Translations under genes and position numbers: made by a program | DNA from: Octopus bimaculoides | Taxonomy: Eukaryota | Direction: 5' to 3' | NCBI RefSeq assembly: GCF_001194135.2 | Contig: NC_069008.1 | Span: 14,964,261 to 15,016,388 of the forward strand | Length of the DNA: 52,128 bases | The notes under the pieces: generated by a model | What the model saw: only the letters and a program-made list of their open reading frames with translations | The model's database searches: none | What the model was told of the DNA's origin: nothing | Shown: one piece after another, positions 5,271-34,484 of the stretch | Layout of the letters: every line of letters starts with the position of its first letter | How positions within the stretch are numbered: the first letter of the stretch is position 1

Positions 5271-5340
<70 letters not shown>

Positions 5341-5954: not shown

Positions 5955-6017
<63 letters not shown>

Positions 6018-7659: not shown

Positions 7660-7732
<73 letters not shown>

Positions 7733-7927: not shown

Positions 7928-7994
<67 letters not shown>

Positions 7995-8739: not shown

Positions 8740-8788
<49 letters not shown>

Positions 8789-10061: not shown

Positions 10062-10132
<71 letters not shown>

Positions 10133-10466: not shown

Positions 10467-10528
<62 letters not shown>

Positions 10529-12146
10529 TAAGATACCAGGAAACCCCAAAATGGCTGAAGTCCAAAAGATAGTGCTCATGGGAACTGCCCATATCCTACG
10601 TAAAATACTGTCTATGTGATCTCAAATTTTAAAGCAAACATAATTTTCTTATGGTTTCTTAAACATTCACTTGAACAAAACTGTACAAATCCAAATATAT
10701 GGTACCCTAGGCATAACACCTACATGAACTTCTAACTTGTTGTCTCTTGAGGTCTCTGGGTGAGACTTGGATCCAACTTGTACAAATGCAAAACAAAAGT
10801 CAAACATAAAATAATAATGATAATAATGGTTTCAAATTGTGCCACAAGGGTAGCAGTTTTGTGAAGAAAGTTTATTAAAAGCTGCTACAGTCACAGCAAG
10901 ACATAGGGAAACCAAAACTCGAACGAAGTTAAAAGCCAGAAAAAAAAGACCAGAGATTATTTGACTGGCAGGAGAAGACGTTGCATAGTAGATTCCCAAA
11001 GACAGTTGCAGCAAAGAGTAGTAGTGAGACATGGTTATGGCTGCAGAATGAAAAGCTGAAGAGGGAGACAGAAAGTTTGATCGTAGCTGCACAAGATCAA
11101 GCATTAAGGATTAATTGGATAAAAGCCAAGATAGACAAGAACCAAGTAGATTTCCAATGTAAATTATGCAAATCAAAAGTGGAAAGTGTTACTCATATGC
11201 TAAGTAAATGTTGCATGCTGGCATAGAAAGAATACAAGAAAAGACATGACAATCTAAAGAGAGTGGTTCACTGGGAGTTGTGTAGAAAGCTAAGATTTGA
11301 ACATAGTGATACATGGTATGAACATGAACCTAGTAAAGTACTAGAAAGTAAGAAATACAAGATGTTTTGGGACTTTAACATTCAAACTGACAGAGTAATA
11401 GAAGCTAAAAGGCCTGATTTGGTAGTAGTACAAAAAGAGAATAGAAAGTACCGGATAATTGACTTCACAGTCCTAAATGATGAAAAAATCAATATGAGAG
11501 GTAGAGAAAAAATAGCTAAGTATCAGGACCTAACCATTGAATTACAGAGACTATGGAAAGTGTGGGTAAAATACATCCTAGTAGTTATATGTGCATTAGG
11601 ATCTGTCCCTAAAGATTTGAACAGATGGGTAGAGGAAATAGGCATAAAACCCAATTTAGTACAGCTCCAGAAAACACTGCTATTAGGGATAGCTAGGATA
11701 CTTAGGAGGGTTCTTGGCATCTAAAGTCAGTTGTTGTCGCTCGATGTTAGGATTTTTTTCTTTGCCAACAATCTAATCTGTTGGGTGCATATGAAAATAA
11801 TAATCATTCACTTACTTTTGTAGTAGGAAATCTCATTGCTGTCCAGCATGTTAATGACTGTCATTATATTTTTCGGTGAGTAATTCTTACAAACTTGGCT
11901 GACTTTATTGTAAGAAAAGAATTCCGATTGGCTGTTTAGAGCGATGATGGCACATTCCAGTTGACTTCGGCTTGGATAGAATTTGTCTGTTTGAGATGTC
12001 TGAAGATAACCATAGGAATAACCAGGAACCAAAGATTTGTAATATGCTTCATCAAAATTCTGGTCTGTGGCACCGGTCAGAATTGTTGCAAGGTTTACCA
12101 GCAGCACGATGGTCACGGTTGGATCGGTAGAAGGAAACTGGTACAT
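1337..12146 (-). CDS. Five-coding-exon gene for a 296-aa predicted secreted protein (signal peptide + PAN/Apple-like module + uncharacterised Cys/Trp-containing domain). Coding exons: 12146-11816, 7923-7745, 5806-5643, 2415-2252, 1389-1337
   Basis: All four introns are GT-AG (donors GTAAGT, GTATGC, GTAGGT, GTAAGT; acceptors TTTCAG, TTTCAG, CAACAG, TTTCAG) with matching phases 1/0/2/1. Exons sum to 891 nt with no internal stop and end ...GYGTADSMAIFIRMKPN*. Hydrophobic VTIVLLVNLATILTGA near the N-terminus. SRSQLECAIIALNSQSEFFSYNKVSQVC resembles PAN/Apple. AATAAA on minus strand at 1201-1196. An acceptor AG at 12149-12148 implies a further upstream exon. Confidence 0.88.
1403..1905. repeat. Microsatellite cluster: (ATC)n 1403-1460, (ATT)n 1764-1790 abutting (AAT)n 1791-1880, (AAAT)n to 1905
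   Basis: Direct reading. Confidence 0.9.
2590..2830 (-). mobile_element. mariner transposase C-terminal relic
   Basis: VPQLPCRPDPVPCNFWLFPKLKEILRDSRFED matches the mariner YSPDLAPxDFxLFxxLK motif region. Confidence 0.75.
2855..3024 (+). mobile_element. SINE family A, 5' half
   Basis: Aligns by eye to 18136-18302. Confidence 0.8.
4081..4246 (-). mobile_element. SINE family A, 5' half
   Basis: Reverse complement of the family A head, ending in (TA)n at a gap. Confidence 0.8.
4655..5045 (+). mobile_element. Internally deleted mariner transposase relic
   Basis: ASVKFCVKLGKSAKETLNIVRQAYGDE (HTH), EDDERFGRP, WILHDDNAPCH (catalytic HDNA motif). Confidence 0.8.
5083..5250 (+). mobile_element. SINE family B, 3' half
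   Basis: Near-identical to 17870-18030. Confidence 0.85.
6021..6190 (+). mobile_element. SINE family A, 5' half
   Basis: Same head sequence. Confidence 0.8.
6449..7460 (-). mobile_element. DNA transposon 3' relic, probably Chapaev(3)-like
   Basis: Minus-strand fragments CFLFVWNSRD..HY..KDWPKR, PLVDPQKI, LHIKLG, NLGAVSDQHGERFHQDISKMETRYQG...MMGDYYW. Terminus CACTGGGCAAC at 6449. Family name from recalled motifs only. Confidence 0.6.
7505..7630 (+). mobile_element. SINE family C fragment
   Basis: GTTCTGAGTTCAAATTCCGC...GTCGACTCTGCCTTTCATCCTTTCG, shared with 51055-51251 (-) and 9040-9165 (-). Confidence 0.7.
7995..8650 (+). mobile_element. Probable N-terminal ORF fragment of an R4/Dong-like LINE, bracketed by (AAT)n tracts
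   Basis: Disrupted ORF (DREPLHKL...LNEIIYSVAKVI...WRSRIEN) resembling the pre-RT region of these elements. Flanked by (AAT)n at 7930-7993 and 8740-8787. Confidence 0.45.
9855..10132 (-). mobile_element. SINE family A, 3' half with expanded (GT)n
   Basis: CCGAACCGCTAAGTTACGG-like...GGGGACAAACACAGAC matches the 3' half of 18136-18548. Confidence 0.7.
10528..10827 (+). mobile_element. Extremely 5'-truncated R4/Dong-like 3' end
   Basis: KIPGNPKMAEVQKIVLMGTAHILRKILSM* (RLE C-terminus) directly after (AAT)n, then a 3'UTR and ATAATAATGATAATAAT tail. Confidence 0.7.
10870..11805 (+). mobile_element. R4/Dong-like LINE 3' region (zinc knuckle + restriction-like endonuclease), one in-frame stop
   Basis: Same-frame ORFs 10981-11226 and 11263-11724: ETESLIVAAQDQAL, CKLC..ESVTHMLSKC, RHD, WDFNIQTDRVIEAKRPDLVVV...IIDF...EKIAKYQDL. 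Short AATAATAAT tail. Confidence 0.9.
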
Positions 12147-12321
12147 CCTGCACTAGAATCAACAGAAACAAAGAGAAAGAGAGAAATGGTGAAAAGGATG
12201 GGGTAAATAAGAGAAGGAAAAAGAGAAGAGATGTAGAGAAACTTATGGAAGAGACGAGAAAGCGAGAAAAATATGGACAGGAAAATGACTGAGAAGGAAA
12301 AAGTGTGGGAACGAAGAACAA

Positions 12322-12440
12322 TGTTTTAGAAAGAAGATAATGAAGGGGAAACAGTGTTTTAGAAAGAAGATAATGAAGGGGAAAGTGTTTTAGAAAGAAG
12401 ATAATGAAGGGGAAACAGTGTTTTAGAAAGAAGATAATGA
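12322..12440 (+). repeat. 31-33-bp minisatellite (TGTTTTAGAAAGAAGATAATGAAGGGGAAACAG), >=3.5 copies running into a gap
   Basis: Head-to-tail units with no spacers. Confidence 0.9.
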
Positions 12441-13204
12441 NNNNNNNNNNNNNNNNNNNNNNNNNNNNNNNNNNNNNNNNNNNNNNNNNNNNNNNNNNNN
12501 NNNNNNNNNNNNNNNNNNNNNNNNNNNNNNNNNNNNNNNNNNNNNNNNNNNNNNNNNNNNNNNNNNNNNNNNNNNNNNNNNNNNNNNNNNNNNNNNNNNN
12601 NNNNNNNNNNNNNNNNNNNNNNNNNNNNNNNNNNNNNNNNNNNNNNNNNNNNNNNNNNNNNNNNNNNNNNNNNNNNNNNNNNNNNNNNNNNNNNNNNNNN
12701 NNNNNNNNNNNNNNNNNNNNNNNNNNNNNNNNNNNNNNNNNNNNNNNNNNNNNNNNNNNNNNNNNNNNNNNNNNNNNNNNNNNNNNNNNNNNNNNNNNNN
12801 NNNNNNNNNNNNNNNNNNNNNNNNNNNNNNNNNNNNNNNNNNNNNNNNNNNNNNNNNNNNNNNNNNNNNNNNNNNNNNNNNNNNNNNNNNNNNNNNNNNN
12901 NNNNNNNNNNNNNNNNNNNNNNNNNNNNNNNNNNNNNNNNNNNNNNNNNNNNNNNNNNNNNNNNNNNNNNNNNNNNNNNNNNNNNNNNNNNNNNNNNNNN
13001 NNNNNNNNNNNNNNNNNNNNNNNNNNNNNNNNNNNNNNNNNNNNNNNNNNNNNNNNNNNNNNNNNNNNNNNNNNNNNNNNNNNNNNNNNNNNNNNNNNNN
13101 NNNNNNNNNNNNNNNNNNNNNNNNNNNNNNNNNNNNNNNNNNNNNNNNNNNNNNNNNNNNNNNNNNNNNNNNNNNNNNNNNNNNTCTTTTTTTTATCACA
13201 GGTT

Positions 13205-13980
13205 TTTGTTGTAACTCCTGGAACCTTGCATGCGTGGCGGGCGGGCTGGCTCCCTGCAGCCTACGACACTATGTTATCTGTTCTTTTCACTATCTAATAC
13301 TTTCCTGATTATTCTGGTCGTGCCAATGTGGCAAACCTTTTGTATCAGTTCTACTCAGCACTCTATTCCAATTTCCTTTATATTTCTCTTGATGTCTTCT
13401 GATACTGTCCGCAAGGATCCAACAATAATTAACATTCTCTTAACCTTCTTCATTTTCCATAGTCGGGCTATTTCGTACTTAAGAGGGTTGTATTTATCTA
13501 TTTTTTCGCCTTCCTTCGTGACTATTCGTGGGTCAGAAGGGCACGCAACATCTATCACATGTGGTGCATCTTGTCGACCACCACTAGGTCCGGTCTGTTA
13601 TGTTCTAATACCTGATCTATTTGGATTGGGATTTTGCAAGTCTCCAACTCCGCCACTCTTTGCGGTTTGTGCTCATACCAGATCTTATATCTCTCTAGTC
13701 CACACTTTTCGCAGTTTCCAATATAGCACTTCTGCTACCTGATCATGTCGCCACAACTTGTAGTTGTTTTGGGCAAGTCTAGGGCATTCGTTCGCGATAT
13801 GAACAAGGGTTTCGTCCACTCTATTACGGACGCGGTACAGTGGTGACACTTGCTCGTTCCCAAGGCTGACCCTTCAAAGCAAAGTGTGGGGCTGCCAGTG
13901 TAGTGCTCTCAGTCTCTTATTTCTAGTGTTTCTTTTCTTCAACCAAACGCACCAATGTTTTCCAGCAACTTCAGGTGTGG
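13205..13980 (-). mobile_element. R4/Dong-like LINE 3' fragment
   Basis: IDVACPSDPRIVTKEGEKIDKYNPLKYEIARLWKMKKV (RLE). 5' junction abuts (TTA)n at 13982-14028. Confidence 0.8.
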
Positions 13981-13981
13981 C

Positions 13982-14029
<48 letters not shown>

Positions 14030-14039
14030 TATTTTTTAC

Positions 14040-14770
14040 TTTTAATCTGCATGTTTGTTACAGTCACTTGCCGAGACCCAGTGTCCTAGGGCGAGTGAAG
14101 GATAAGAGATGTTACAGTTTGACTGAGAGCTTGGGGAGGAGACGTGGCAGGGACAGTAGCGAAATATTTTCATGTAATACAACACAGACATTTAAACGTA
14201 TAGGGGTTTTTCTAAGGATGTGGGCACAGTACTTGTCAGAACAATCTTTTGGATTTCTTTGAGACATGGTTCTCCTGGGACCTTATCTAGATGTTTCTGA
14301 CATCCTTTTTTATCATACTTAGGGCACCTACAATAACAGGAGTAATTCTCGTTTAAAGTACCACATCTTTTGCATTTCAATTTCCAGGCCCCCCTTATAT
14401 TTACTTAGTTTGTCAAATTCCTTGACAAAAATATTTTTATCAGTGAGAAGACTTACATCTATTAGTTTACAGGTATTTTCTTCCCTGTCTTTAATAATTA
14501 TGTCTGGTCGATTAGCCTTGATCGTTCTGTTGTGTTGACCGGAAAATCCCAGAGGATAGTGAGATTTTTACTTTCGACGACTGGCTCAGGATGATGTTCA
14601 CCACTAAGCAGGAGTGCTGATTTTGTAGTGTTTACATATTCTCCAATGTAAATACTGCCTACCCTATCGTGGCAATTTTTGTATTCGTTTGGTGTCAGCA
14701 CAGGACATCCTGAGACGAGATGGTCCATTGTTTCATCAAATTTATCGCAGATTCTGCATTTAGGGTCAGA
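14040..14770 (-). mobile_element. Second, different R4/Dong-like LINE 3' fragment
   Basis: DHLVSGCPVLTPNEYKNCHDRVG...EPVVESKNLTILWDFPV. Ends in the (TTA)n tract shared with the element above. Confidence 0.8.
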
Positions 14771-14789
14771 ACACTGTTGAGAAAAGACG

Positions 14790-15160
14790 CCGACAATGGG
14801 AACCTGGTAGGGAATTTTCTGCCCCTAACTCTGCTAAACAGAATTCAAGATTCTGGCCAAGGTGTTAGTGGAAACGTTGATGCTTGTCGACGGTAGTCTG
14901 GTTGGGGAGGCACAAACGTGCGCAATCCCGAGCAGGTCTATCCACGACAACCTCCACCTGATGCGATACATCGAAGAGAGAGCTCGAACTAAAGCTGGCT
15001 TCGGTGGGGCCCTTAATTTAGATCAATCGAAAGCTTTCGATAGGGTCGACCATCACTACTTGGAAGCCGTCCTTAAAGTGACTGGTTTCGGACCCGTTTA
15101 CAGAGGCTGGATTGCTGCAATGCACAGCGGCACTTGTACGGTAGTCAAAGTAAATGGCAG
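14790..15160 (+). mobile_element. Tx1/L1-clade reverse transcriptase fragment
   Basis: QTCAIPSRSIHDNLHLMRY...LDQSKAFDRVDHHYLEAVL...GFG...WIAAM. Confidence 0.8.
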
Positions 15161-16644
15161 TATACTCATCATGACTACCCGACTGATGGGGGTACACCAA
15201 GCATATGCATCACAACCACATGTGCACGACATGGTGATCTCATATCAAGATAAACAGCGCATAATCTTGCAAGTGGGGTCTAGTTAGAATTCTCTTCAGG
15301 TTGAGTAGCCCATCCCACTCAAAAGGTCCCTGAATAAGGTTTGTTTTAAGGATGATGAACAAAGCATAAATGTTACGGAAAACCTTCAAGAAAGCATATT
15401 AAACGTCTCACGCTGCTCGTTTCAACAGGTTCAAAACTTTAGGGTTACAACCGATAAAGTTTGGTTAAGAGANNNNNNNNNNNNNNNNNNNNNNNNNNNN
15501 NNNNNNNNNNNNNNNNNNNNNNNNNNNNNNNNNNNNNNNNNNNNNNNNNNNNNNNNNNNNNNNNNNNNNNNNNNNNNNNNNNNNNNNNNNNNNNNNNNNN
15601 NNNNNNNNNNNNNNNNNNNNNNNNNNNNNNNNNNNNNNNNNNNNNNNNNNGGGGGTGTAAAGCAGAATACGAGAGGGAGTCGAGAGATCGTTGGGGAGAA
15701 AGGTGTACGGATTGGTAACAGAACACGCTTTTAATGATGTGAAAAAGAGGCATGGAAGTTCTTTTGAGAGAAAAAGAGAGAGACAGACAGACAGACAGAC
15801 AGGCAGACAAGCAGACAGACAGACAAGCAGACAGACATACAGACGGACAGTTGTTCTACATCTGATACATGTGAATAAAAACGGGATGGTCGCGACTGGA
15901 ATAACTGACCATAGAATTCCTCGGCCAGGCTTGACCAGGAGCAAAACAACAAAAACGACAACATCCTGATTTTGTATTCACAGTTACCGTATTCCTGAAC
16001 AAATGATGAGATCGTTATGGTCTGAACAGCTTCGATTATTGATCTGCTCAATTACAGATGACCTAGGGTTAAGCAAAAACAGTTATAAGTTTAAAGACTA
16101 CCTCCAACCTCCAGATCCATTAGACCGCAACTTGTTCCGGTTTGTAAGGCGTTTAAGTGACCGAGAGTGCAATACTACCTAATCAACAGAACGTCAGTCC
16201 GACACAGCTCCAGCTGTCAGTTGTGCTTATTTTAAATGGAGTGGACTGGAGTAATGTGAAAAATGAAGTATCTTGCTCAAAGGTAGAATGCTCAATTAAG
16301 AAGTCAGTCTTACGATCATGAGTGAGATCAGGACCTTAACTGCTACGCTACGCACCGCAATCCTAAACCTAACACATGCCACATACATATATACACACGC
16401 ACACATACACGTGCGAAGGCTCTCACACAGGCACAGACACACGTGCACGCATGCACACGAAGTAAGTAGATTATGAAACAAAACTTACCTTAATTTGGGG
16501 TTGAGGCAGTAGCTACGCTTTCAGTGGACAATGAGAGACGTTGTCAGGTCTGCCCACTATGACAGTGAAGTAATGTCCTCTGCTCGGATGACCGTCCACT
16601 TATATTGGTAATGTCACAAAATATCAAGATTGGCCACAAATTTT

Positions 16645-17040
16645 TGTATTATCTACTGCTTTCAGGACTACCACAGAGGTCAGCACCGTTTCTAGATGTC
16701 AAGTCAGAACTCCTAAAATGCCAATATTTTTCACTGCTTTGAAATGTCGCCGAGACCGATTTTGCTTTTCATCTTTTTGGACTCAATAAAAAGGTTTTCA
16801 CCCTTTTGGACTCAATACCAGTTGAGCAACGAATTCGATGTTATTGACTAAACACTTCCTTACAAAATTCCACGCCTTGTAGTAAAAAGAATATTATCCA
16901 CTGCATTCAAAACTATAGTGGAGGGCAGCACTACCTCTAGATATTAATCCAGAGCTACAAATACCGATATTCTTCACTGCTTTCAGAATTACCACAGAGA
17001 TAAGTTCTGACTCTAAATGTCAAACCAGAGCTCAGGTTTT
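16645..17040 (+). repeat. Diverged ~76-bp tandem repeat
   Basis: Recurring (C/T)ACTGCTTT...CCACAGAG...CTAGATGTCAA at about 76-bp spacing. Confidence 0.5.
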
Positions 17041-17284
17041 CAAACTGTCAATTGATAGCAATTGACTTTCCGCAACTGTCAGCAATATCCACTAATATCA
17101 CAACTCTATATAATAGCCAATGATGTCCACTTTGGTCAGCACACTTCATTGAGATGAACACAGTCCACTTTGATATAATTTCTTCGCTAACGCACTACTA
17201 AACTAGGTGTGTTACACATCATTATGAACAGACACGCTTCACTGAGCACATTCGATAAACAAATGCGTAATCATTTGGATTTGT

Positions 17285-17475
17285 CCGATGTTGTTGTTGT
17301 GGTGGAGGTGGAGGTGGTGGTGGTGGTGGTGGTGGTGGTGGTTGAGGTGATAGTGGAGGTAAAGGTGATGGTAGGTGCGGTGGTGTTTGGAGACGGTTGT
17401 GATGATGGTGGTATTGTCGTGGTACGGGGGTGGGAGTGGGGTAGGCTGTTATGTTTACGGTAGTGGTGGTGTTCA
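17285..17475 (+). repeat. Imperfect (GGT)n low-complexity tract
   Basis: Visible GTG/GGT run. Confidence 0.85.
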
Positions 17476-17538
17476 TGGGACGTTGAGCATAATAGAAAAT
17501 ATCGGTGGTTCTTAATCATAAAAGGTTTAAATACATAC

Positions 17539-17574
<36 letters not shown>

Positions 17575-17657
17575 TACACATACACATACACAAATGCGCT
17601 CACAGGCATACATACTCACATACACATACATGCAGCCATCATGATTACACGAGTATT

Positions 17658-18036
17658 GTGGAGGCGCAATAACCCAGTGGTTAGGGCAGCGAACTCGCGG
17701 TCGTAGGACCGCGAGTTCGATTCCCAGACTGGGCGTTGTGAGTGTTTATTGAGCGAAAACACCTAAAGTTCCACGAGGCTCCGGCAGGGAGTGGTTACAA
17801 CCCTGCTGTACTCTTTCACCACAGCTTTCACTCTTTCTTCCTGTTTCTGTTGTACCTGTATTTCAAAGGGCCAACCTTTTCACACTCTGTGTCACGCTGA
17901 ATCTCCCCGAGAACTACGTTAAGGGTACACGTGTCTGTGGAGTGCTCAGCCACTTGCACGTTGATTTCACGAGCAGGTTGTTCCGTTGATCGGATAAACT
18001 GGAACACTCGTCGTCGCAACCGACGGAGTGCCATGA
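17658..18036 (+). mobile_element. Full-length tRNA-derived SINE (family B) with 12-bp TSD
   Basis: Head GGCGCAATAACCCAGTGGTTAGGG...GAGTTCGATTCCC. TACACGAGTATT at 17646-17657 and 18037-18048. Confidence 0.88.
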
Positions 18037-18135: not shown

Positions 18136-18548
18136 AGGCGTAGGAGTGGCTGTGTGGTAAGTAGCTTACTTACCAACCACATGGTCCCGGGTTCAGTCCC
18201 ACTGCGTGGCATCTTGGGCAAGTGTCTTCTACTATAGCCTCGGGCCGACCAAATCCTTGTGAGTGGATTTGGTAGACGGAAACTGAAAGAAGCCCGTCGT
18301 ATATATGTATATATATATGTGTGTGTATGTGTGTGTGTGTGTGTATGTTTGTGTGTGTGTGTTTGTCCCCCAACATCGCTTGACAACCGATGCTGGTGTG
18401 TTTAGGTCCCCGTAACTTTGCAGTTCGGCAAAAGAGACCGATAGAATAAGTACTAGGCTTACAAAGAATAAGTCCTAGGGTCGATTTGCTCGACTAAAGG
18501 CGGTGCTCCAGCATGGCCGCAGTCAAATGACTGAAACAAGTAAAAGAG
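18136..18548 (+). mobile_element. Full-length tRNA-derived SINE (family A) with internal (TA)/(TG) microsatellite
   Basis: A-box-like GTGGCTGTGTGGTAAG and B-box-like GGTTCAGTCCC. Multiple copies of the same sequence elsewhere in the window. Confidence 0.85.
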
Positions 18549-19887: not shown

Positions 19888-20066
19888 ATATATATATATA
19901 TACGACGGGCTTCTTTCAGTTTCCGTCTACTAAATCCACTCACAAGGCTTTGGTCGACCCGAGGCTATAGTAGAAGACACCTGCCCAAGGTGCCACGCAG
20001 TGAGTCTGAACCCGGAACCATATGGTTCGTAAGCAAGCTACTTACCACACAGCCACTCCTGCGCCT
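19888..20066 (-). mobile_element. SINE family A, 5' half
   Basis: Reverse complement of the head. Confidence 0.8.
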
Positions 20067-24540: not shown

Positions 24541-25029
24541 ACTCACTATTTATCATAGTCCTTCTCATACCCTTCCCTGAATGTCCATCACTCTGGGGAC
24601 AAATAAAATAATTAATTTTATTATCATTACAATTATTTCATTTTGCTATTTTTTTTTTCTTAAAGTGTATAAACAATTTTTGTTTCAGAAATAAATACAT
24701 GTTTGCATTTAAAGTGTATAATTTTTCTTTCTATTCGTTTTTTTTTTATTTTCTTTTTGCTAAATATAATTATAAACTACGGTTTAAACAATAAATTACC
24801 TGCCCCTGGATACCTTCTAACGAAGACAGTACCCACACAAGTAATTCCCAGGAGTGCCTCCGGATTTAAACATCCCCTGGTTGCTTGGATACTTCAGACT
24901 ACCCCTGAAAAATTGAAGCAATCTTATCATTTACCTATATATATATATATATACACACGCATAATATGTCACCTATTACCATCAGGCACTTGCTACTAGT
25001 GGCTTCTTGCAAAAAATAGCATTCACATC

Positions 25030-25225
25030 CAACACTAGGCTTAAGAACTGTCTATTCTTGAATCGATCCACCCTCATTCATACCGATAAATGGTCCAGCT
25101 ATAGAAATTTACAGCAACTTGTCTATATTCACTTAACGGTAAACCATTTACAGAACTTCGTTGACCCTGAAACCGGCGCTTGCACAAACCACATTGAGGC
25201 CTATTGGTCCCGACGGTTGAAGTAT
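25030..25225 (+). mobile_element. Merlin (IS1595/ISXO2-like DDE) transposase relic
   Basis: TLIHTDKWSSYRNL...HLTVNHLQNFVDPETGACTNHIEAYWSR matches the Merlin/ISXO2 catalytic region. Confidence 0.8.
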
Positions 25226-26769
25226 GTCACTGGATCATCGGGTTGGCGAATATATGTATGGATTTGTGGCGAAGAAAAATTTCCAGAATTTCTATACATT
25301 TCTCGGATCTATTTTAAAACGGGGGCACCAGTTTTCATTTATGTTTTATGTAGTGTTTTTGGTACTGAAAGACTTTCAAACTTCGTATACTTATCTATTT
25401 TGTGTTATAGAACAGAAAAAAAATTTTTGTATTTGAATTTATTTCATGTAAAAAATTGTCTTATTTCGATAATTTCTACTAATCACTGACGTCTATTCAG
25501 TTGAAAACAGTTAGCGCTGTAACGGTGTATATCGTATTNNNNNNNNNNNNNNNNNNNNNNNNNNNNNNNNNNNNNNNNNNNNNNNNNNNNNNNNNNNNNN
25601 NNNNNNNNNNNNNNNNNNNNNNNNNNNNNNNNNNNNNNNNNNNNNNNNNNNNNNNNNNNNNNNNNNNNNNNNNNNNNNNNNNNNNNNNNNNNNNNNNNNN
25701 NNNNNNNNNNNNNNNNNNNNNNNNNNNNNNNNNNNNNNNNNNNNNNNNNNNNNNNNNNNNNNNNNNNNNNNNNNNNNNNNNNNNNNNNNNNNNNNNNNNN
25801 NNNNNNNNNNNNNNNNNNNNNNNNNNNNNNNNNNNNNNNNNNNNNNNNNNNNNNNNNNNNNNNNNNNNNNNNNNNNNNNNNNNNNNNNNNNNNNNNNNNN
25901 NNNNNNNNNNNNNNNNNNNNNNNNNNNNNNNNNNNNNNNNNNNNNNNNNNNNNNNNNNNNNNNNNNNNNNNNNNNNNNNNNNNNNNNNNNNNNNNNNNNN
26001 NNNNNNNNNNNNNNNNNNNNNNNNNNNNNNNNNNNNNNNNNNNNNNNNNNNNNNNNNNNNNNNNNNNNNNNNNNNNNNNNNNNNNNNNNNNNNNNNNNNN
26101 NNNNNNNNNNNNNNNNNNNNNNNNNNNNNNNNNNNNNNNNNNNNNNNNNNNNNNNNNNNNNNNNNNNNNNNNNNNNNNNNNNNNNNNNNNNNNNNNNNNN
26201 NNNNNNNNNNNNNNNNNNNNNNNNNNNNNNNNNNNNNNNNNNNNNNNNNNNNNNNNNNNNNNNNNNNNNNNNNNNNNNNNNNNNNNNNNNNNNNNNNNNN
26301 NNNNNNNNNNNNNNNNNNNNNNNNNNNNNNNNNNNNNNNNNNNNNNNNNNNNNNNNNNNNNNNNNNNNNNNNNNNNNNNNNNNNNNNNNNNNNNNNNNNN
26401 NNNNNNNNNNNNNNNNNNNNATTTTTGAAGCTGCGATTTTGAAAATTTTTTTCAGAATCGGAATCTAGATCCGGATCCCGGTAGGCTCACGGGTGTTACT
26501 TAAATACAGAGATCCCCTAAGGGTTTGGGTTAGTTTTTAGGGACCTCTGTATTTAAGTAGTGCAAACGGAACGTCTACCTACAAAATTAAGATTACATTA
26601 AAGAAGTGATTTTAAATTCTCAATCGCAGAATAATGCTAATAATATAGCCTGAACAGGATAAACTACCCCTATTTTGCAGAGAAAAGTGTAGGTGAACTT
26701 TCTAAGGACATCTCAACGCTTCTAAAAGCAAACTTCGTTTGTTTATTTACGTATTTACGTTTGTCGTAA

Positions 26770-27000: not shown

Positions 27001-27109
27001 TGTATATATAACATACGGGAAGCGAATATTTTTTTTTCCCACGAGAGTTCCGGACCTCAGTAAAGTATTCGTTTGCAAACAACCAAGTTAACATATGCTA
27101 GCATTCGTA

Positions 27110-30100
27110 ATGGCAACCTCCGATGGCCATGCGAATCTTGTATTGTGCTCTCATTCAGATGCCAATATCATCGATACTGAACACACACGCTGGTTAGCGG
27201 TAAGTTTGAATTACTACAGCAATCAAAGATAATGTTTTTGGCGAATACGAAAGTACGGAAACTGCTTGAAGTTTTTATAAATACACATTGATTCATTGAG
27301 GTAGTTTTAAATCTCTGAGCGAAGTGTTAGCTAATAAACTTTAAAAGATTTATCCAAAAAATCTTATTTAGCTGTTATTTTTGGCACACCTCACAACCAC
27401 CTCAATGAACAATGAAAAAAAAAAGAAACAAACAATTTAAATATGCTTAAAAAACAAACATTTAACTTTCAGTTACTCTGTCNNNNNNNNNNNNNNNNNN
27501 NNNNNNNNNNNNNNNNNNNNNNNNNNNNNNNNNNNNNNNNNNNNNNNNNNNNNNNNNNNNNNNNNNNNNNNNNNNNNNNNNNNNNNNNNNNNNNNNNNNN
27601 NNNTTATTCTTTGTAAGCCTAGTACTTATTCTATTGGTCTCTTTGCCGAACTGCTCAGTTACGGGGACATAAACACACCAGCATCGGTTGTCAAACAATG
27701 GCGGGGGGACAAACACAGACACACACACATATATACATATATATATATATATACGACGGGTTTCTTTCAGTTTCCGTCTACCAAATCCACTCACAAGGCT
27801 TTGGTCGGCCCGAGGCTATAATAGAAGACAACTTGCCCAAGGTGCCACGCAATGAGACTGAACCCGACACAGTCACACCTGTGCCTAGTATATATTTTTT
27901 TTTTCGCTTTACTTATATATTTTTCTTATTTCTTTCATTGCAGGAGTTCCTACCTGAGAACTATAAACATCACATTTGTAACATAGAAATTGTCGAGAAA
28001 GAAGTAAAAGTAACAATGAGGTTGGCTGTTTCGACCAGAGAAGGGGCTAAAGAATGGTTGGAGTCCATGCAGAAGTCATCCCTGTCAACTTTCCGAGTGG
28101 AAAGAACTTATCCTTCCTCTGGTGAAAAGGTTTTGTTCAAGGTGTGTATCACACATTCGACAGGTTTGATGAGATTAAAGAAAAGATAGATACATATACA
28201 ACTAAACAATTTTGTTACTTTTGTATATGCCCCTAAAGCCCAGTTCACACTTAACTGGATTGTCCTGCGGATACTTATGGATGCAACTTTTATGGATATC
28301 CATATTCTTCCACAACGCTACGGCGGGGTAATTGATATAAATAGGAGTCATTTATGAATGTTATAAGCATCTTTCCACCAAGAATAGGGAAAATTCTAAG
28401 GAAACTTACAAACAATATGTGAAAGTCTGACTGGAAAATTCCGACGAATGCTATTTAAAGACTTCTTCAGGCAATTCACGGACTCTTTCTGATTCTTTAT
28501 TTAATTTATGGAATGTGGTGTCATCACATGACCAAGCACTTCAAAAGGTGTGTACTTGGTTGTATATACTCATGCATAATCAAGGAATTGCTCCTGGCTG
28601 GTCCCCACGATGTTCTATGACATTTGTATTTATCTCTAAATGTCCGTAAACAATTCAAATTTCGCTTTCAGCAGAATTTCTTTCTACATTCATGTAGTTT
28701 TAATGTTTTATGTCCAGTTAGTGATTGCTAGCTACATGTTCATTTCACCTAAGAAGTACTTTTGAAGAAATGAATTTGTCCTTGTATGTTCTAATTGTGA
28801 ATTCTTTCAGCCCTGATCCAATTTCAAAATACTGAAGTTTGCACATGCAAGTTTTACTTTCTCACCACTCTCACTTCAGACTGAATTTCGCTGTCAACAT
28901 AACACAAAACCAAGAACCGCAACAGCTGATCAACGCAAGGGCTCAAAGAACACCAATTGTCCAGCAGGCTTGAGCATTGTTGGGAAAGTCAGCACCTTTG
29001 AAAAGTCAGATGGCAAAAAGAGGAAATGCAGGTAATTGAATTTTGCATCCATTTTCACCCAGATACAACCGTTCTGATTGTTCGTAAATTTTTGTACAGG
29101 TTCTGTTAGTTCTCTGTATCCGAATCTCAACTTTCTTTTGATAGGGTGTCGCACTTATCACCTCTATGGAAAAAGGGTGTGAAAAAATGATGAAATCTAT
29201 ACCTGTTTTTTTTGTTTTTTTGTACAATTATATTAGTTAAGACCAAGCATTGCAACAGAAATTGAATGCAGTGCATTCAGTTCATCATATAAAACGGCAG
29301 CCTATGACATACATGTTTGTTCTGTTTTTTTTTTTAGGTCTTCAGATCCTCATATGCCTGATCATCCAATGATTGTGAAATTCAAGTGCACGCATAACCA
29401 CCCTCTTAGGGCTGAAGATGCTTTGAAGCATAGGGATGTGAGTGAAGAGGTTAAGGTAAAGTTCCTGGAATTGTTCAATAGGGGTTATACTCCTTCAAAA
29501 GCACTGGAACTGCACAAGTATGATCTTCAACTCCAGCACAGTGACAACTACATTTTCATCAGTGCCGATAGATCCATCACTCCTGATTTACAGTACTGTT
29601 ACAGGTTAGTAGATTACATATTGAAGGGGGCTGTTTAATGCAAAATCATGTGTTCAGTATGGTTAATCTATGCATTTCGACACTGTATCTTACATATTTT
29701 GACAAGTACTCCTGTACATCGCAGGCAATAAGTTGATTTTTCAGGGATCACAATGGCAGCCATGATTTGAAAATGAGCAGCCCTTTTCCTTGTGAGAGTG
29801 TAGATATTCATAGATGAACTTTGGTATACAGTATAAGTAGTTGGTGATTACTTATTGGCAAGACACATGGGTTCAGGTTTGTCAGTTTGGAAACCAGAGT
29901 TCTCTGCAGAAAATATTTTACACTTGGTGGAAATGCCAAAGAATGAACAGTTTGAATAACTTGAAAAAAATTACACTTGGTATTTAAAAAAGTTACACTT
30001 GATTGTAAAATTGCAACCCCATAGACTTTGACTTTGCACACAAAACTGAAAACTTATGCTTGGTGGAAAAAAAAATTTCCCTTGGTGCTGCAGCTGCTTT

Positions 30101-33081
30101 TCAGAGTGTCGTAATGGTGGCAGTGTCGTAATGACTCAACTCAACTTGGGCCTCCTTCTACAACTCAACTTGAGCTTGAACTACTTTAGACTCAACTTGA
30201 CTTGGGACTCGACTCAACTTGTGACTCGACTACTAGCTCAACTTGACCATGACTAGGACTCAACACAGTTGTTGACTTGATTCGATTCAACTTGATTATT
30301 TAAGCATACCTAAAATCCACAAACTGTGTACTACTACAGTAGAACTAGTCAGGCATAGAATGGTGTATGCCACTCTGTGAATACAGCATAGCAGGTCTCA
30401 CATAAGCACCACCCCCCATCCTCATAGATCAATTGAGCACCATCTCCATATGGAGCTAGCATTAGGTACCTATGCCCAGACTGAGATTAGTGATACTGCA
30501 TGTACCCATTGATATATGCAAGGAGGGCGCTATACGACACAACGCCATATTGATTACGATGTTTCCAGATCAACACCAACATTTTAAATTAGGAATGTAC
30601 AAAATCAGTCAAAAAAATTAGGAAGTTCAGAGTAATTTCTTTCTACACAATATATTTTGTCTATGGGGGTTAAAAATGTGTAACTCTCAAAAAAATTGAG
30701 AAAATGTGAAATTATATGTACAACATGACTAGGGAGCTCACTCATCATGTCATCAGTGCTGCCAATTTGCATAATTTACTAAAAAATGTAAACAAGTCTA
30801 ATTACCTTATTTTATTTTTGTCCAATTTTGCTGATTTCTCTTTTGAAATATAAAAAAAAAATTATTTGTTTAGATTAGAACAGTAAAATTTTATGCGTTT
30901 AATTTCCTTTTAAGTACACTTTTAATTCGGACTAACATAAAAACACCTTTCAATATGTACATTTGTATGGTACGTTGGTGTCGATTTTTCCAATGAAAAT
31001 AGAGTGTTCATAAATAACAGACAACTTTGTTTTCACCCATAAATCAACTGCTTTAGTATGGCAATTTTATAGGAGTTTCGCAAGAGATAGCACAAATGCA
31101 TACTAACACACACACACACACACAAATACACACATGGTAAATGACATTCACAGAGAAATTTGGTGGTAGCACTGAGTGTATTATACACTGGAGAAAACAC
31201 TGGTGGAAACCTCGCTTTGTGTGTGGTGTGCAATTTACTCTTGCAAATGTATTTCTAGTTCATAGTAATGTAATACTAATTTGTTAATGTACTATACTAG
31301 TTTGCTAAAATGGGGAGATGGCGAAGCAAAAGTCCTCGTTTGTGACCCTTTGTGAAATGTGTTCCTACATTCTCTATTTGTGGTGCTGATATTACTTCAT
31401 TCCCTTTCTCTTCAGGTTATACTACCAGACATTCAAGAAAGAGTATGGTGAAGCCAAGGGAGAGTTTATCCTCGAGGAATTGAAGAGGAAGATCGAGGAA
31501 GGGTCATTCGGTGATGACATCAAATTGTCACTTGTTGGACCAGAGGGAAAACAAGCTGCCATTGCCATTGTAACGCCGCTGATGAGACGTGTGCATAAAC
31601 TGATCAAACATTCTGGTGAACTAGTATTCATTGATGCCTCTGGAAACATGAACAGACAAGGGTGTCGAGTGTTTTTGCTCTTGACGCACAGTTGTGCTGG
31701 AGGACTACCACTTGGAGTGCTGATTACAACAAGTGAGAGCACAGAAACAATTACGGAGGCTCTGAAGTTGTATAATTCTCTGTTGGATAATAGTGCATAT
31801 TTTGGGCGAGGCTGGAAATCTGGGCCCGAAATCTTCTTGACAGATGACAGTCCATCGGAAAGTCAATCACTCCATGCTGTCTACCCTGATGCCACACTTC
31901 TTCATTGTGTGTTTCACATTCTTCAGGCATTTTGGCGCTTCCTCTTGGAAGCTAAGAATGCAGTTAGGAAGGAAGATAGGCCACATCTGTTCTCCTTGTT
32001 GAAGGACATGATTTACTGTGACACCATCGAGGCGCTGAAGGCAAAACATGGTGAAATCATGAATGATGAAACATTGAAGAGGTATGCGTGTGTACAAAAG
32101 CACTTGGAAGACATCTATGCCAAAAAGACATCGTGGGCAGTGTGTTATCGAGTTGGCCTGAATGTTCGTAACAACACAAACAACTACGCAGAGACAGCCA
32201 TGCGGATAATGAAGGATCAGATCCTTGAAAGGACCAGGGCCTATAATATGATCCAGCTGGTTGATTTCATCGTCACAAGAATGGAGACATATTATGAAAG
32301 ACGGCTAATCGATGTCTGCAACAACAGACTAGACAAGTTGCTCCAGTCTCGATTTCTTCCTGATATCGTGGCTGGATCTAAAATTGATCCAAACGAAATT
32401 GTTGGGATTGCCAACAGTAAGAACTTGTTCATGGTTCCAAGTGAGACAGATGATCCAACAACCTACATGGTGGATATTGCTCTTGGTGTGTGCCAATGCA
32501 GGAAAGGAATAACTGGTGGACCATGCAAGCATCAATACCTGGTTTTCAAGAAGCTGAACATCCTGTCATGCTGGAACTTCATTCCTGTAAATGATCCGTC
32601 AATGAGGGAGTTGTTGTATGAAGTGGCGACAGGCTGTTCGAATGTTCCAAAACAATGGTTTCTGTCCCCGAACTGCCAGAATGAACCAGATCAAGTGGAC
32701 ACAAACAGTATAACGATGGAGTCCATGAATAACATAAAAGCTGAACCTCATTGTGCTGACAGTGACGACAACTGCATGGAGTCAAACAATCAGAAAAATG
32801 AAAACGATGGAGCTGACTGCAAGGATATGGAGATTTCAGATGGTTGCACATCAAAACCAAGCACTGAAGATGGAAGTGACCCAATAATCAATGAGCTAAA
32901 CAAAGCTTTTCTTGCTTTACAAGAAAGTTATGCTCAAGACAAAGAATTCTTTGGGGGACCAGTACAAAAATTCACCAAGCAACTTCTAGAACTAACTTCT
33001 GGAACAGATATTGCATTAGCTTCCGCGCTTCACTGGTTTGGTTGGCACTCTGATGTGGCAAGAAAAAATGAAAATATCTAG
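27110..33081 (+). CDS. Spliced Mutator/MULE-family transposase or transposase-derived gene, 790 aa. Coding exons: 27110-27199, 27944-28141, 28880-29031, 29338-29604, 31416-33081
   Basis: Four GT-AG introns with compatible phases 0/0/2/2. Total 2373 nt, no internal stop. Motifs: RCQH...NCPA...HNH (WRKY/GCM1/FAR1-like Zn DNA-binding domain), VFIDASG, FLTDDS, CVFH, TNNYAE (MULE DDE core), CQC-x7-CKH (SWIM finger). Confidence 0.9.
27604..27862 (-). mobile_element. SINE family A in intron 1 of the MULE gene
   Basis: Matches both halves of family A across the internal microsatellite. Confidence 0.8.
30121..30300. repeat. Cluster of GACTC/AACTTG subrepeats (hAT-like non-autonomous element relic) in MULE intron 4
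   Basis: Repeated GACTCAACTTG / GACTCGAC motifs following CAGTGTC. Confidence 0.45.
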
Positions 33082-33214
33082 TCAATATGAAGACAATTGG
33101 TGTGCATCCAGGAGAAAGATGGTTGGTGGTAGAGAAACCGGTGACCATTGAAGAATTGTTTGAAAAGTGTGAAAGGAAAGGTGCCATTCAGCTCTCAGAT
33201 TATGCCTAGATGCA

Positions 33215-33540
33215 AAGCTCAACATAACACTCACGAATATGTTAAACACAACCAATCTCTTGGCAAAACACACTCTACCAAATAAATAATTATCATCATA
33301 ATGATGATTAATCATCACCATCATAACAGTCATCAAATTAATGTCATTGTCATCATCATCATCGCTACTATCATAAATGTCATCATCACCATCATCACCA
33401 CCAACATCACTGTCATCGCCATCATCATTACAATTACAATTCATCATCACCACCATGACAATCATCAACATCATCATTGTCATCTTGAATCATCATCATC
33501 ATCACTGCTACCATCACCAACATCATAACCATCATCGAAA
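33215..33540 (+). repeat. Imperfect (CAT)n low-complexity tract
   Basis: Visible ATC/ATC-like trinucleotide run. Confidence 0.85.
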
Positions 33541-34334
33541 GAGAAAATAAGCATGGTTATTCCTTACCCAAGTGACCATGTATAATAAATTACAATATTG
33601 CGAAATTTCGTTGTTCATAATGATAAAAACAATTATAATACAATAAAATGGGGGGAAAAAATCAACAGTACGCCTCAGTCTGTTAATATTATGGGGAAAA
33701 AAATTAATTTTATTCCCAAACCTTTTGGAAACAACATTAGCATCATCTAGCTGTGACTGTCAATAATAGACTAGCGTCATAGAATTAAATACAATAATCA
33801 ATAATATTAATATGACAACTTGTTTTTGTACATCCATACTTGTGGCGTGTGTGATACTTGCTTTAAAGGAAGAAGTGAGTGGCAAAGCGGGAGAGGAGGA
33901 CAGAGAGAAAAAGAGAGACATTAAGTGATGATGGAATTCATTTTGTGTTTTTTAAATGTTTATCAGATCGCAAGAAAAGTTGATACAAAGATTGAAAGGA
34001 AAGTTGATACAAAGATACACACGTTATTAAATTAAAAACTGGAAAGAGGAGGAACACCGAGGAAGTGAGAGAGACAATAGATGCATAGATTGAAAGAAAA
34101 GTTGATTCATAGAGACATAGACACGTTTGTTAATAACTACAGCAAATATTGGATGTCACTTTCCTCTCTGGCCAACCTCTCATCAACTTTTTCAAGTATT
34201 ACTTGATGAGGGAGGTGAGAATAGAGAGGAAAGTTCAACAAATGGTAGGTGAATGTGGCAGGGATGGTACGAAGGAATGACGGAATCACCTTGAGCATGA
34301 TCCTATAGAACAAAGAGAAAAAGTGTTTTGCTCT

Positions 34335-34484
34335 CATACTCTTTTACTCTTTTACTTGTTTCAGTCATTTGACTGCGGCCATGCTGGAGCACCGCCTTTA
34401 GTCGAGAAAATCGACCCCAGGACTTATTCTTTGTAAGCCTAGTACTTATTCTATCGGTCTCTTTTTGCCGAACCGCTAAGTTAC
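34335..34484 (-). mobile_element. SINE family A, 3' end
   Basis: TTTCAGTCATTTGACTGCGGCCATGCTGGAGCACCGCC is the reverse complement of 18500-18540. Confidence 0.8.

What the first reader, a model, noticed from the sequence alone, without database searches (positions are those of the whole stretch)
27110..33081. Intact five-exon MULE transposase gene inside the ZNF cluster: candidate domesticated transposase
The 790-aa frame is open across four canonical introns, two of which have accumulated SINE/MITE insertions, indicating long residence. It retains the Zn DNA-binding motif, all three putative catalytic residues (D in IDASG at 31633, D in LTDDS, E in NNYAE) and a SWIM finger. I found no TIRs or 9-bp TSD by eye. 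Every other TE in the window is broken. MULE domestication is established in plants (FAR1/FHY3, MUSTANG) and fungi (Aft1/Rcs1), and an animal spliced example embedded among ZNFs would be notable. Autonomous MULEs can have introns, so an active element is the alternative.
Basis: partly seen in the sequence, partly recalled or inferred. Interest (0 to 1): 0.74.

Follow-up and report, generated by a model that had tools for sequence, protein, structure and literature searches.

The report
Octopus gene tamed from jumping DNA
An octopus gene at this spot is a captured "jumping gene" enzyme (a Mutator-type transposase) that arrived by horizontal transfer from a family also found in sea urchins and a mantis shrimp, can no longer move, and has been kept intact by natural selection in at least two Octopus species.

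Summary
Window 27095-33081 (+) carries an intact five-exon, 795-codon gene, the annotated Octopus bimaculoides LOC106873077. The assembly gap lies inside intron 1 and does not touch the frame.

The protein is a Mutator/MULE transposase. It keeps the D314/D385/E500 triad, the CH motif and the SWIM finger, and its predicted fold is closest to an IS256-family transposase.

**Evidence for domestication:**
- O. vulgaris has the same gene at the syntenic site.
- dN/dS between the two species is 0.18 (p = 4e-18).
- The 2388 coding bases have no indels, against 47 in 3504 aligned non-exon bases.

**Evidence that it is an immobilised transposon:**
- A 65-bp left terminal repeat survives at 27022-27086. 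It aligns to the terminal inverted repeats of full copies in a mantis shrimp (perfect 9-bp target duplication) and in Lytechinus urchins.
- No right end exists.
- The ancestral 85-codon C-terminal tail is a frameshifted relic at 33082-33285.

**Origin:** horizontal transfer. Octopus-urchin dS is only about 0.7 and their introns still align. All four introns are ancestral to the element.

**Not tested:** expression, genome-wide copy number and other cephalopods.

Verdict: a young domesticated MULE transposase, a new member of a known kind.

The parts
27013..27021 (.). Candidate left copy of the 9-bp target-site duplication (ATACGGGAA), directly outside the element terminus
   Evidence: Its position follows from the terminus alignment. 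It is conserved in O. vulgaris. No second copy next to a right end was found in the window or in L001, so it cannot be confirmed.
27022..27086 (+). Relic of the left terminal inverted repeat of the ancestral MULE. It starts GCGAA, has its core CCCACGAGAGTTCCGGACCTCA at 27038-27059, and now forms the 5' flank/UTR of the gene.
   Evidence: It aligns to both inverted ends of the Oratosquilla elements (L002, L003), to the left end in L006 and L007, and to the right ends in L004 and L005. It is the only occurrence in the window, and there is no inverted partner. Identity to O. vulgaris is 96%, against about 90-93% for neighbouring non-coding DNA. The sample is too small for that difference to be significant.
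27095..27199 (+).
   Evidence: It is homologous to exon 1 of the L. pictus copy (window 27132-27206 matches L005 10005-10076).
27200..27943 (+). Intron 1, holding the assembly gap 27483-27603 and a SINE copy at 27604-27866
   Evidence: The O. vulgaris counterpart (L001 10106-11309) is gap-free and holds two inverted SINEs.
27944..28141 (+). Exon 2 (198 nt, phase 0/0)
   Evidence: The exon has the same length in L. pictus, and the cumulative coding length across exons 2-4 is the same in Oratosquilla.
28880..29031 (+). Exon 3 (152 nt). It carries the first zinc ligands of the N-terminal DNA-binding domain (C106, H108, C128).
29338..29604 (+). Exon 4 (267 nt). It carries the zinc ligands H171 and H173 (KCTHNHP).
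31416..33081 (+). Exon 5. It encodes the DDE catalytic core (D314 at 31633-35, D385 at 31846-48, C405/H408, W481, E500 at 32191-93), the SWIM finger (32491-32532), an acidic linker, a C-terminal helical region, and the derived stop TAG at 33079-81. The fifth intron of the relatives is cleanly missing at about 32517/32518.
33082..33285 (+). Broken relic of the ancestral C-terminal tail of about 85 codons, ending at the ancestral stop 33283-85. It lies outside the present ORF.
   Evidence: It aligns to the coding tail of the urchin copies. Both Octopus species share a 10-bp, a 13-bp and a 6-bp deletion and an in-frame TGA. Each species also has one private indel.
33289..33560 (-). Fragment of the element's 3' non-transposase region, in inverted orientation
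   Evidence: An exact 18-mer plus a GAT-rich run are shared with L009 7899-8150. There are weaker matches to L004, L005 and L007. O. vulgaris has the same arrangement.

Best explanation
The locus is a molecularly domesticated Mutator-like (MULE) transposase gene.

**How it arose.**
- An intron-bearing MULE entered the Octopus lineage as DNA, by horizontal transfer. Its family also lives in Lytechinus sea urchins, in the mantis shrimp Oratosquilla and in one unidentified marine sample.
- Before O. bimaculoides and O. vulgaris split, one copy lost its right end. Its 3' part was rearranged, intron 5 was lost, and a 10-bp deletion cut off the basic C-terminal tail. The copy could no longer move.
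- Since then the remaining 795-codon gene has been held by purifying selection in both species. The old left terminal repeat sits just upstream of the start codon. From its position it probably serves as promoter or 5'UTR.

**What it most likely does (inferred, not shown).** It probably works as a sequence-specific DNA-binding protein for the host. It could be a regulator in the manner of FHY3/FAR1. It could also be a truncated-transposase repressor of related incoming elements. A retained cutting activity is possible but not demonstrated.
For: **Gene and identity.** The five-exon open frame equals the annotated LOC106873077.

**MULE nature.**
- Pfam MULE matches 47 of 51 family members, and SWIM matches 22 of 51.
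- The conserved columns D314, D385, E500, C405, H408, W481 and the SWIM residues C600/C602/C611/H613 are all kept.
- The AF2 model has pLDDT 78.6. Its best PDB match is the ISCth4 (IS256-family) transposase at E = 1e-7.

**Transposon origin.**
- The terminal sequence at 27022-27086 aligns to the inverted ends of the relatives.
- The Oratosquilla element L003 4672-17687 has a perfect 9-bp TSD, GGGCGGGGG.
- Copies are dispersed in Oratosquilla. Lytechinus carries internally deleted copies.

**Horizontal transfer.**
- dS is 0.67-0.71 between octopus and urchin, against about 1.9 to the shrimp.
- Intron DNA is alignable between octopus and L. pictus at 73-80%.
- The tree is incongruent with host phylogeny.
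- Named proteins of the other taxa in the hit list, including the urchin Strongylocentrotus and the gastropods Pomacea and Littorina, are at most 46% identical. No other cephalopod appears among the hits.

**Immobility.** There is no right TIR and no second TSD copy in the window or in 10 kb of O. vulgaris flank. The 3' fragment is inverted.

**Host-level constraint.**
- The orthologue is syntenic.
- dN is 0.026, dS is 0.147 and the ratio is 0.18. There are 48 nonsynonymous against 67 synonymous changes, p = 4e-18.
- Both branches are constrained: 13:25 and 23:31 nonsynonymous to synonymous, against a neutral 3.75:1.
- There are 0 indels where 32 are expected (P = 1e-14), and 0 nonsense changes where 8-16 are expected.
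- The discarded tail right next to the ORF did collect frameshifts, including one private indel in each species.
Against: - Selection is measured on one species pair only, at dS 0.15.
- The O. sinensis counterpart is named a 'LOW QUALITY PROTEIN' in the O. vulgaris record. That could mean a broken copy there or an assembly error.
- Genome-wide copy number in Octopus could not be searched. Only annotated proteins and this window were examined.
- The octopus protein itself scores below Pfam's gathering cut-offs (MULE 25.0 against 27.6 bits).
- Retention of the catalytic residues is uninformative at this low divergence.
- No function is known.
Confidence: 0.72

Rival explanations
1. A dead transposon copy that is drifting neutrally. 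It merely happens still to be open, and annotation pipelines picked it up as a gene.
For: It is clearly a transposon remnant: a left TIR relic, a broken tail and a rearranged 3' part. No expression data are available. O. sinensis is labelled low quality.
Against: - dN/dS is 0.18, with p = 4e-18.
- There are 0 indels where 32 are expected and 0 nonsense changes where 8-16 are expected.
- Both lineages are constrained.
- The adjacent tail relic decays as neutral DNA should.
Confidence: 0.06
2. A still-functional transposase source gene. The copy cannot move itself, but it supplies transposase in trans to non-autonomous relatives elsewhere in the octopus genome. It would then be part of a live transposon family rather than a host gene.
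For: The DDE triad, CH motif, W and both zinc modules are intact. The family is or recently was mobile in other hosts.
Against: - Selection among transposon copies cannot preserve a copy that does not itself multiply.
- The conserved basic tail found in the full-length relatives examined is lost.
- The terminal motif occurs only once in 52 kb and once in the O. vulgaris locus.
- No other octopus protein of this family appears among the 120 hits.
Confidence: 0.1
3. An autonomous, currently mobile MULE.
For: The ORF is intact and has introns, as some autonomous MULEs do. A left terminal repeat is present.
Against: - There is no right terminal repeat or TSD.
- It sits at the same chromosomal site in two species.
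- It is a single annotated copy.
- The tail is truncated and the 3' part inverted.
Confidence: 0.02
4. An ancient bilaterian host gene inherited vertically and lost in most lineages. This would explain the shared intron positions.
For: Intron positions and phases 1-4 are identical in three phyla. Amino-acid identity is 68-80%.
Against: - Synonymous divergence to the urchins is only about 0.7, and intron DNA is still alignable.
- The relatives are bounded by TIRs with a 9-bp TSD and are multicopy.
- No close counterpart appears among annotated proteins of Strongylocentrotus, of the gastropods in the hit list or of other cephalopods.
Confidence: 0.02

Closest known systems
Autonomous animal MULEs, e.g. 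Muta1 of Aedes aegypti (Liu & Wessler 2017, PMC5225508); MuDR/Jittery in plants
   Same: [quoted passage not shown]
- IS256-related DDE core with a CH motif and a W between the second D and the E.
- In the relatives, terminal inverted repeats and a 9-bp TSD.
   Different: - The octopus copy has only one end, a truncated tail and a fixed syntenic position.
- It is under host-level purifying selection.
- Its family carries five introns and a SWIM finger. According to that paper, 13 of the 14 Muta families carry a FLYWCH finger instead.
FHY3/FAR1 and MUSTANG (plant MULE-derived genes)
   Same: A MULE transposase retained as a single-locus host gene, keeping the N-terminal zinc finger, the core domain and SWIM. 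The working model, a DNA-binding regulator, is borrowed from these.
   Different: - Independent origin in an animal.
- No significant FAR1-domain match: 1 of 51 relatives at E = 0.0055.
- Far younger.
- The DDE triad is still intact.
- No functional data.
Vertebrate ZSWIM1/ZSWIM3 (Pfam PF21056, ZSWIM1-3 RNaseH-like)
   Same: Animal proteins with a MULE-type RNase-H-like core plus SWIM. The octopus protein gives a weak match at 20.9 bits.
   Different: The match is below the gathering score of 27.2, so there is no orthology. The octopus gene derives from a separate, recently transferred element.
'FHY3'-type MULE-derived transcription factors reported across Metazoa, one in Octopus (Mukherjee & Moroz 2023, PMC10027918)
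   Same: That paper already states that MULE-derived genes occur mosaically in animals, including one in Octopus bimaculoides.
   Different: - This accession was not found in the supplementary files held. Some of those files were cut when stored.
- The passages of the paper read here present no synteny, selection, terminal-repeat or horizontal-transfer analysis for it.
ISCth4 / IS256-family bacterial transposases (PDB 6xgx, 6xg8, 6xgw)
   Same: Best structural match of the predicted catalytic core: E = 1e-7, TM 0.42-0.47 on the target.
   Different: 11-15% sequence identity. They are prokaryotic, with no SWIM finger and no WRKY-like N-terminal finger.

Membership tests
Mutator/MULE transposase superfamily | DDE triad in an RNase-H-like core related to IS256 | tested here: met
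   D314, D385 and E500 fall in columns at least 90% conserved. The Foldseek top hits are the ISCth4 IS256-family transposase at E = 1e-7.
Mutator/MULE transposase superfamily | CH motif and conserved W between the second D and the E (PMC5225508) | tested here: met
   C405, H408 and W481 are at least 90% conserved in the family and present in both Octopus proteins.
Mutator/MULE transposase superfamily | Pfam MULE domain (PF10551) above the gathering score | tested here: inconclusive
   The octopus protein scores 25.0 bits against a cut-off of 27.6 (E = 2.7e-5). 47 of 51 relatives match, with a best E-value of 2.6e-10.
Mutator/MULE transposase superfamily | SWIM zinc finger CxCxnCxH (present in many MULEs) | tested here: met
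   C600, C602, C611 and H613 are invariant in 51 sequences. The Pfam SWIM match is sub-threshold for the octopus protein (E = 0.027) and matches 22 of 51 relatives.
Mutator/MULE transposable element (mobile unit) | Two terminal inverted repeats flanked by an 8-10 bp target-site duplication | tested here: not met
   In Octopus only the left terminus is present (27022-27086). No inverted partner and no second TSD copy were found in the window or L001. The feature is met in the relatives: L003 4672-17687 has a perfect 9-bp TSD.
Domesticated (exapted) transposase gene | Orthologous copy at a syntenic position in different species | tested here: met
   The O. vulgaris locus L001 is colinear on both sides, including the downstream C2H2 ZNF gene. 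It has the same five exons. Only two species were examined.
Domesticated (exapted) transposase gene | Intact ORF under purifying selection after immobilisation | tested here: met
   dN/dS is 0.18, p = 4e-18. There are 0 indels against 32 expected. Both branches are constrained.
Domesticated (exapted) transposase gene | Loss of mobility and single copy | tested here: inconclusive
   The element is one-ended and rearranged. There is one annotated locus per genome. The whole genome could not be searched for unannotated copies.
Domesticated (exapted) transposase gene | Expression and a host function | not testable with these tools
No paper names the gene.
FHY3/FAR1 family | FAR1 DNA-binding domain (PF03101) and shared descent with the plant genes | tested here: not met
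   The octopus protein has no FAR1 match. 1 of 51 relatives matches at E = 0.0055. The nearest relatives are animal transposons.

The most novel reading that the evidence does not exclude
The octopus protein may be more than a DNA binder. It could be a still-active domesticated cut-and-paste nuclease or recombinase, co-opted within a short evolutionary time after a cross-phylum transfer of an intron-bearing MULE (echinoid, octopod and stomatopod lineages). It would act on host DNA, for instance at sites resembling its old terminal repeat. It would then be an animal counterpart of RAG1, PGBD5 or Kat1 arising from the Mutator superfamily.
Probability: 0.12. Interest if true: 0.85.

Novelty: new member of a known kind. 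Interest (0 to 1): 0.58.

Why it matters
Transposase domestication is a known route to new genes. Well-documented cases from the Mutator superfamily are mostly in plants and fungi.

This case is unusually complete. The donor family can still be seen as full transposons in other phyla, with terminal repeats, a 9-bp duplication and the same introns. The steps of immobilisation can be read off the locus: the lost right end, the inverted 3' part, the lost intron and the frameshifted tail. The selective constraint has a built-in neutral control in that discarded tail.

It also documents DNA-level horizontal transfer between a sea urchin lineage and an octopus lineage, recent enough for the introns to align. 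That bears on how mobile DNA moves among marine animals.

It gives cephalopod biology a lineage-restricted candidate gene that can be tested.

Tried and rejected
- **PDB by sequence or profile.** Only spurious epiregulin matches to the Cys pattern of the SWIM finger were found.
- **N-terminal domain model.** A single-sequence AF2 model of the N-terminal 217 aa had pLDDT 40 and was unusable. It was not fold-searched. The WRKY/GCM1-like nature of the N-terminal finger therefore stays an inference from its C..H..C..HxH ligands and beta-rich prediction.
- **Inverted repeats flanking the gene in the window.** All are SINE copies or distant repeats, not TIRs.
- **A supposed third orthologue (L008).**
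  - I first took the ENA contig L008 (sample ERZ26222911) for an orthologue from a third octopod.
  - Its synonymous distance to Lytechinus (0.34) is smaller than to Octopus (0.47).
  - The same sample holds a second copy, L009, which keeps intron 5, an uninterrupted tail region and the urchin-type 3' region.
  - I therefore rejected it. It is another transposon host, organism unknown.
- **The two full Oratosquilla copies.** They looked like independent insertions but lie in a 24-kb segmental duplication. Independent mobility rests on L006, which is on another chromosome.
- **Viral vector.** A search of IMG/VR with the family alignment found nothing.
- **Literature.** No paper names the gene or its accessions. 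The Octopus 'FHY3' of PMC10027918 could not be matched to it.

Full report
**1. Observation**

The window is Octopus bimaculoides. Joining 27110-27199, 27944-28141, 28880-29031, 29338-29604 and 31416-33081 gives an open 790-codon frame with four GT..AG introns. An in-frame ATG at 27095 adds five codons. The resulting 795-aa product is 100% identical to XP_014775784.1, LOC106873077.

The flagged assembly gap (27483-27603) lies inside intron 1. The gap-free O. vulgaris locus (L001) is colinear on both sides of it, fills the interval with two inverted SINE copies, and has no exon there. The frame therefore does not depend on the gap.

**2. What the protein is**

Pfam gives sub-threshold matches for the octopus protein: MULE 25.0 bits against a cut-off of 27.6, ZSWIM1-3 RNaseH-like 20.9 bits, and SWIM at E = 0.027. 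Across 51 aligned relatives, MULE matches 47 and SWIM 22.

The family is large. It has 2887 50%-identity clusters at E <= 1e-3.

Several columns of the alignment are invariant or at least 90% conserved, and all of them are kept in both Octopus proteins:
- D314, D385 and E500.
- C405 and H408, and W481. These are the CH motif and the W that Liu & Wessler describe for MULEs (PMC5225508).
- The SWIM ligands C600/C602/C611/H613.
- An N-terminal ligand set C106/H108/C128/H171/H173.

An AlphaFold2 model built on that alignment has mean pLDDT 78.6. Its best PDB matches are the ISCth4 transposase of the IS256 family, the bacterial kin of Mutator, at E = 1e-7. Hermes comes next. The protein is therefore a Mutator-superfamily transposase by sequence motifs and predicted fold.

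**3. Relatives and the donor element**

The nearest proteins outside Octopus are from these hosts:

| Host | Identity to the octopus protein |
|---|---|
| Lytechinus pictus / L. variegatus (sea urchins) | 71-80% |
| Oratosquilla oratoria (mantis shrimp) | 68% |
| Lineus (nemertean) | 52% |
| Everything else, including other echinoderms and gastropods | 46% or less |

A neighbour-joining tree groups them as (Lineus,(Oratosquilla,(Lytechinus,Octopus))), inside a family with many paralogues per genome.

In the relatives the gene is multicopy:
- Oratosquilla has five proteins in the 90% cluster, on three chromosome-scale records.
- L. pictus has two loci sharing the same internal deletion of the catalytic domain.

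Exons 2, 3 and 4 have the same lengths in L. pictus as in Octopus (198, 152 and 267 nt). In Oratosquilla the cumulative coding length from intron 1 to intron 4 is the same. Intron phases agree in all three. The shrimp and urchin copies have a fifth intron inside the SWIM finger, which Octopus lacks.

The ends of the element could be defined.
- L006, on another shrimp chromosome, shares only the element itself with L002.
- L002 and L003 carry inverted terminal arms.
- In L003 the element spans 4672-17687. It runs from GCGAATTT... to ...AAAATCGC and is flanked by a perfect 9-bp duplication, GGGCGGGGG.
- The same terminal sequence is at the left end of L007 and, inverted, at the right ends of L004 and L005 in the urchins.

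The relatives are thus genuine MULEs whose transposase gene has introns.

**4. The octopus locus is a one-ended remnant of such an element**

The 65 bp at 27022-27086 end 8 bp before the ATG. They align to those terminal repeats from the very first bases (GCGAA). The 22-mer at 27038-27059 differs by one base from the shrimp sequence. O. vulgaris has the same 22-mer.

No inverted partner exists in the 52-kb window or in the 27-kb O. vulgaris locus, even allowing 5 mismatches in 22. The 9 bp outside the terminus (ATACGGGAA) have no second copy next to a right end.

Downstream of the present stop, 33082-33285 still aligns to the last 85 or so codons of the urchin gene, down to the ancestral stop at 33283-85. 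It is broken by lesions that both Octopus species share: deletions of 10, 13 and 6 bp, and an in-frame TGA. Each species also has one private indel. The 10-bp deletion created the present TAG.

Directly after that, 33289-33560 matches part of the element's 3' region in inverted orientation. The match includes an exact 18-mer.

The copy therefore lost its right end, had its 3' part rearranged, lost intron 5 and lost its basic tail. All of this happened before the two Octopus species separated.

**5. Horizontal origin**

Synonymous divergence was measured between the octopus gene and other copies:

| Comparison | dS | Fourfold-site identity |
|---|---|---|
| Octopus vs Lytechinus copies | 0.67-0.71 | 0.63-0.65 |
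| Octopus vs shrimp copy | about 1.9 | 0.43 |
| Between the two Octopus species | 0.147 | 0.90 |

Intron DNA is still alignable between octopus and L. pictus:
- Window 28701-29097 matches L005 23952-24340 at 73%.
- Window 29333-29776 matches L005 26068-26498 at 80%.

For lineages separated since the protostome-deuterostome split, neutral sites should be saturated (established knowledge). This, together with the patchy distribution, therefore requires DNA-level transfer of the whole element, introns included.

Direction and vector are unknown. A scan of viral contigs found nothing.

**6. Host-level constraint**

The O. vulgaris locus is colinear with the window from upstream of the gene through the downstream ZNF gene. 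It has the same five exons and a 795-codon ORF of identical length.

| Measure | Value |
|---|---|
| Differences in the CDS | 115 of 2388 nt: 67 synonymous, 48 nonsynonymous |
| dN, dS, dN/dS | 0.026, 0.147, 0.18 |
| Binomial test against neutrality | p = 4e-18 |
| Polarised changes, nonsynonymous:synonymous | 13:25 on the O. bimaculoides branch; 23:31 on the O. vulgaris branch; neutral 3.75:1 |
| Indel events | 47 in 3504 aligned non-exon bases; 0 in 2388 exon bases, where 32 are expected (P = 1e-14) |
| Nonsense changes | 0, where 8-16 are expected |

By region, dN/dS is lowest in the SWIM finger (0.02) and the N-terminal zinc region (0.09). It is highest in the C-terminal part (0.29).

An orthologous, immobile copy cannot be preserved by selection among transposon copies, so this constraint is at the host level. 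That is the standard signature of domestication.

**7. Mechanism**

Shown: the structural modules of the protein and the constraint on them.

Inferred:
- The old terminal repeat now lies in the 5' flank and probably contributes promoter or 5'UTR. It is 96% conserved against about 91% around it, but with only 80 bp this is not significant.
- The protein most likely acts as a DNA-binding factor for the host.
- The intact DDE triad does not discriminate between a catalytic and a purely binding role. At dN = 0.026 any given residue is expected to be unchanged.
- Loss of the basic tail would fit a regulatory or repressor role, as with truncated transposases of other families. This comparison rests on my own knowledge and was not tested.

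**8. Limits**
- No expression data could be obtained.
- Only annotated proteins and this window speak to copy number.
- Only one species pair was available.
- The O. sinensis counterpart is named 'LOW QUALITY PROTEIN' in the O. vulgaris record and could not be examined.
- A contig I first took for a third octopod orthologue (L008) comes from an unidentified sample that carries several urchin-like copies. It was set aside.

**9. Comparison with what is known, and novelty**

The locus works like other domesticated transposases. FHY3/FAR1 and MUSTANG are the Mutator-derived examples in plants. It is not a member of those families: it has no FAR1 domain and an independent animal origin. It is not a ZSWIM1/3 orthologue either, since that match is sub-threshold.

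Mukherjee & Moroz 2023 reported one MULE-derived 'FHY3' gene in Octopus. They gave no synteny, selection or terminal-repeat evidence in the text read here, and this accession was not found in the supplements held. Dupeyron et al. 2019 already suspected cross-phylum transfers of animal MULEs.

No paper found names this gene or this octopus-urchin transfer.

I rate it a new member of a known kind. It is well supported as a young domesticated transposase, and it carries an unusually legible history.

Noticed in passing
window 33289-33560 (minus strand); L001 17635-17865; L009 7899-8150: A fragment of the element's 3' non-transposase region lies inverted right after the ancestral stop codon. It shares an exact 18-mer, ATGCTTATTTTCTCTTTC, and then a GAT-rich run that would encode an acidic stretch. 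This suggests an inversion or an aborted transposition that removed the right end. The rest of the 3' region could not be found.
   Followed up: partly
L008 and L009 (ENA analysis ERZ26222911, organism unknown): One unidentified low-coverage assembly holds at least two copies of the same MULE, 95% identical over a 738-bp overlap. At synonymous sites they are closer to Lytechinus (dS 0.34) than to Octopus (0.47). L009 keeps intron 5, an uninterrupted tail region and the urchin-type 3' region. L008 exon 2 has +1 and +5 indels that create a stop, which may be an assembly error.
   Followed up: partly
L002/L003 (Oratosquilla CM102919.1), L006 (CM102933.1): The mantis-shrimp element is about 13 kb, with arms of about 370 bp carrying repeated copies of the terminal motif, and a 9-bp TSD. 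Two full copies sit in a 24-kb segmental duplication 950 kb apart. L006 is a shorter copy on another chromosome. It lacks the roughly 4.9-kb upstream segment of L002/L003 and the region from intron 5 almost to the right arm.
   Followed up: partly
L007, L004, L005 (Lytechinus): The urchin elements carry 4-9 kb of extra sequence between the transposase stop and the right terminal repeat. Two L. pictus gene models (P0023, P0027) share an identical internal deletion of the whole catalytic domain, as expected for non-autonomous derivatives. What the extra 3' sequence encodes was not examined.
   Followed up: no
window 29612-30703 (intron 4): About 1.09 kb of intron 4 is absent from O. vulgaris. 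Part of it (29706-30106) aligns to intron 4 of L008, so it is ancestral element sequence that was deleted in O. vulgaris. It is not an insertion in O. bimaculoides.
   Followed up: partly
window 25007-25489 (+), abutting gap 25539-26420: An ORF fragment matches the ISXO2/IS1595-like DDE transposase domain (Pfam PF12762, E = 3.7e-9). It is a remnant of a different DNA transposon, just upstream of the MULE gene.
   Followed up: no
window 27072-27086 versus shrimp/urchin terminal repeats: The terminal repeats of the shrimp and urchin elements contain GCCAATCAGAG, which looks like a CCAAT box. In both Octopus species the matching bases read AACCAAGTT, so that box is altered.
   Followed up: no
window 18142-18548, 27604-27866, 34340-34484, 19888-20064, 4082-4246, 2856-3024 and others: One abundant SINE family is scattered through the window in both orientations. 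Several assembly gaps abut its copies. O. vulgaris has additional, species-specific insertions of it inside introns 1 and 2 of the gene.
   Followed up: no
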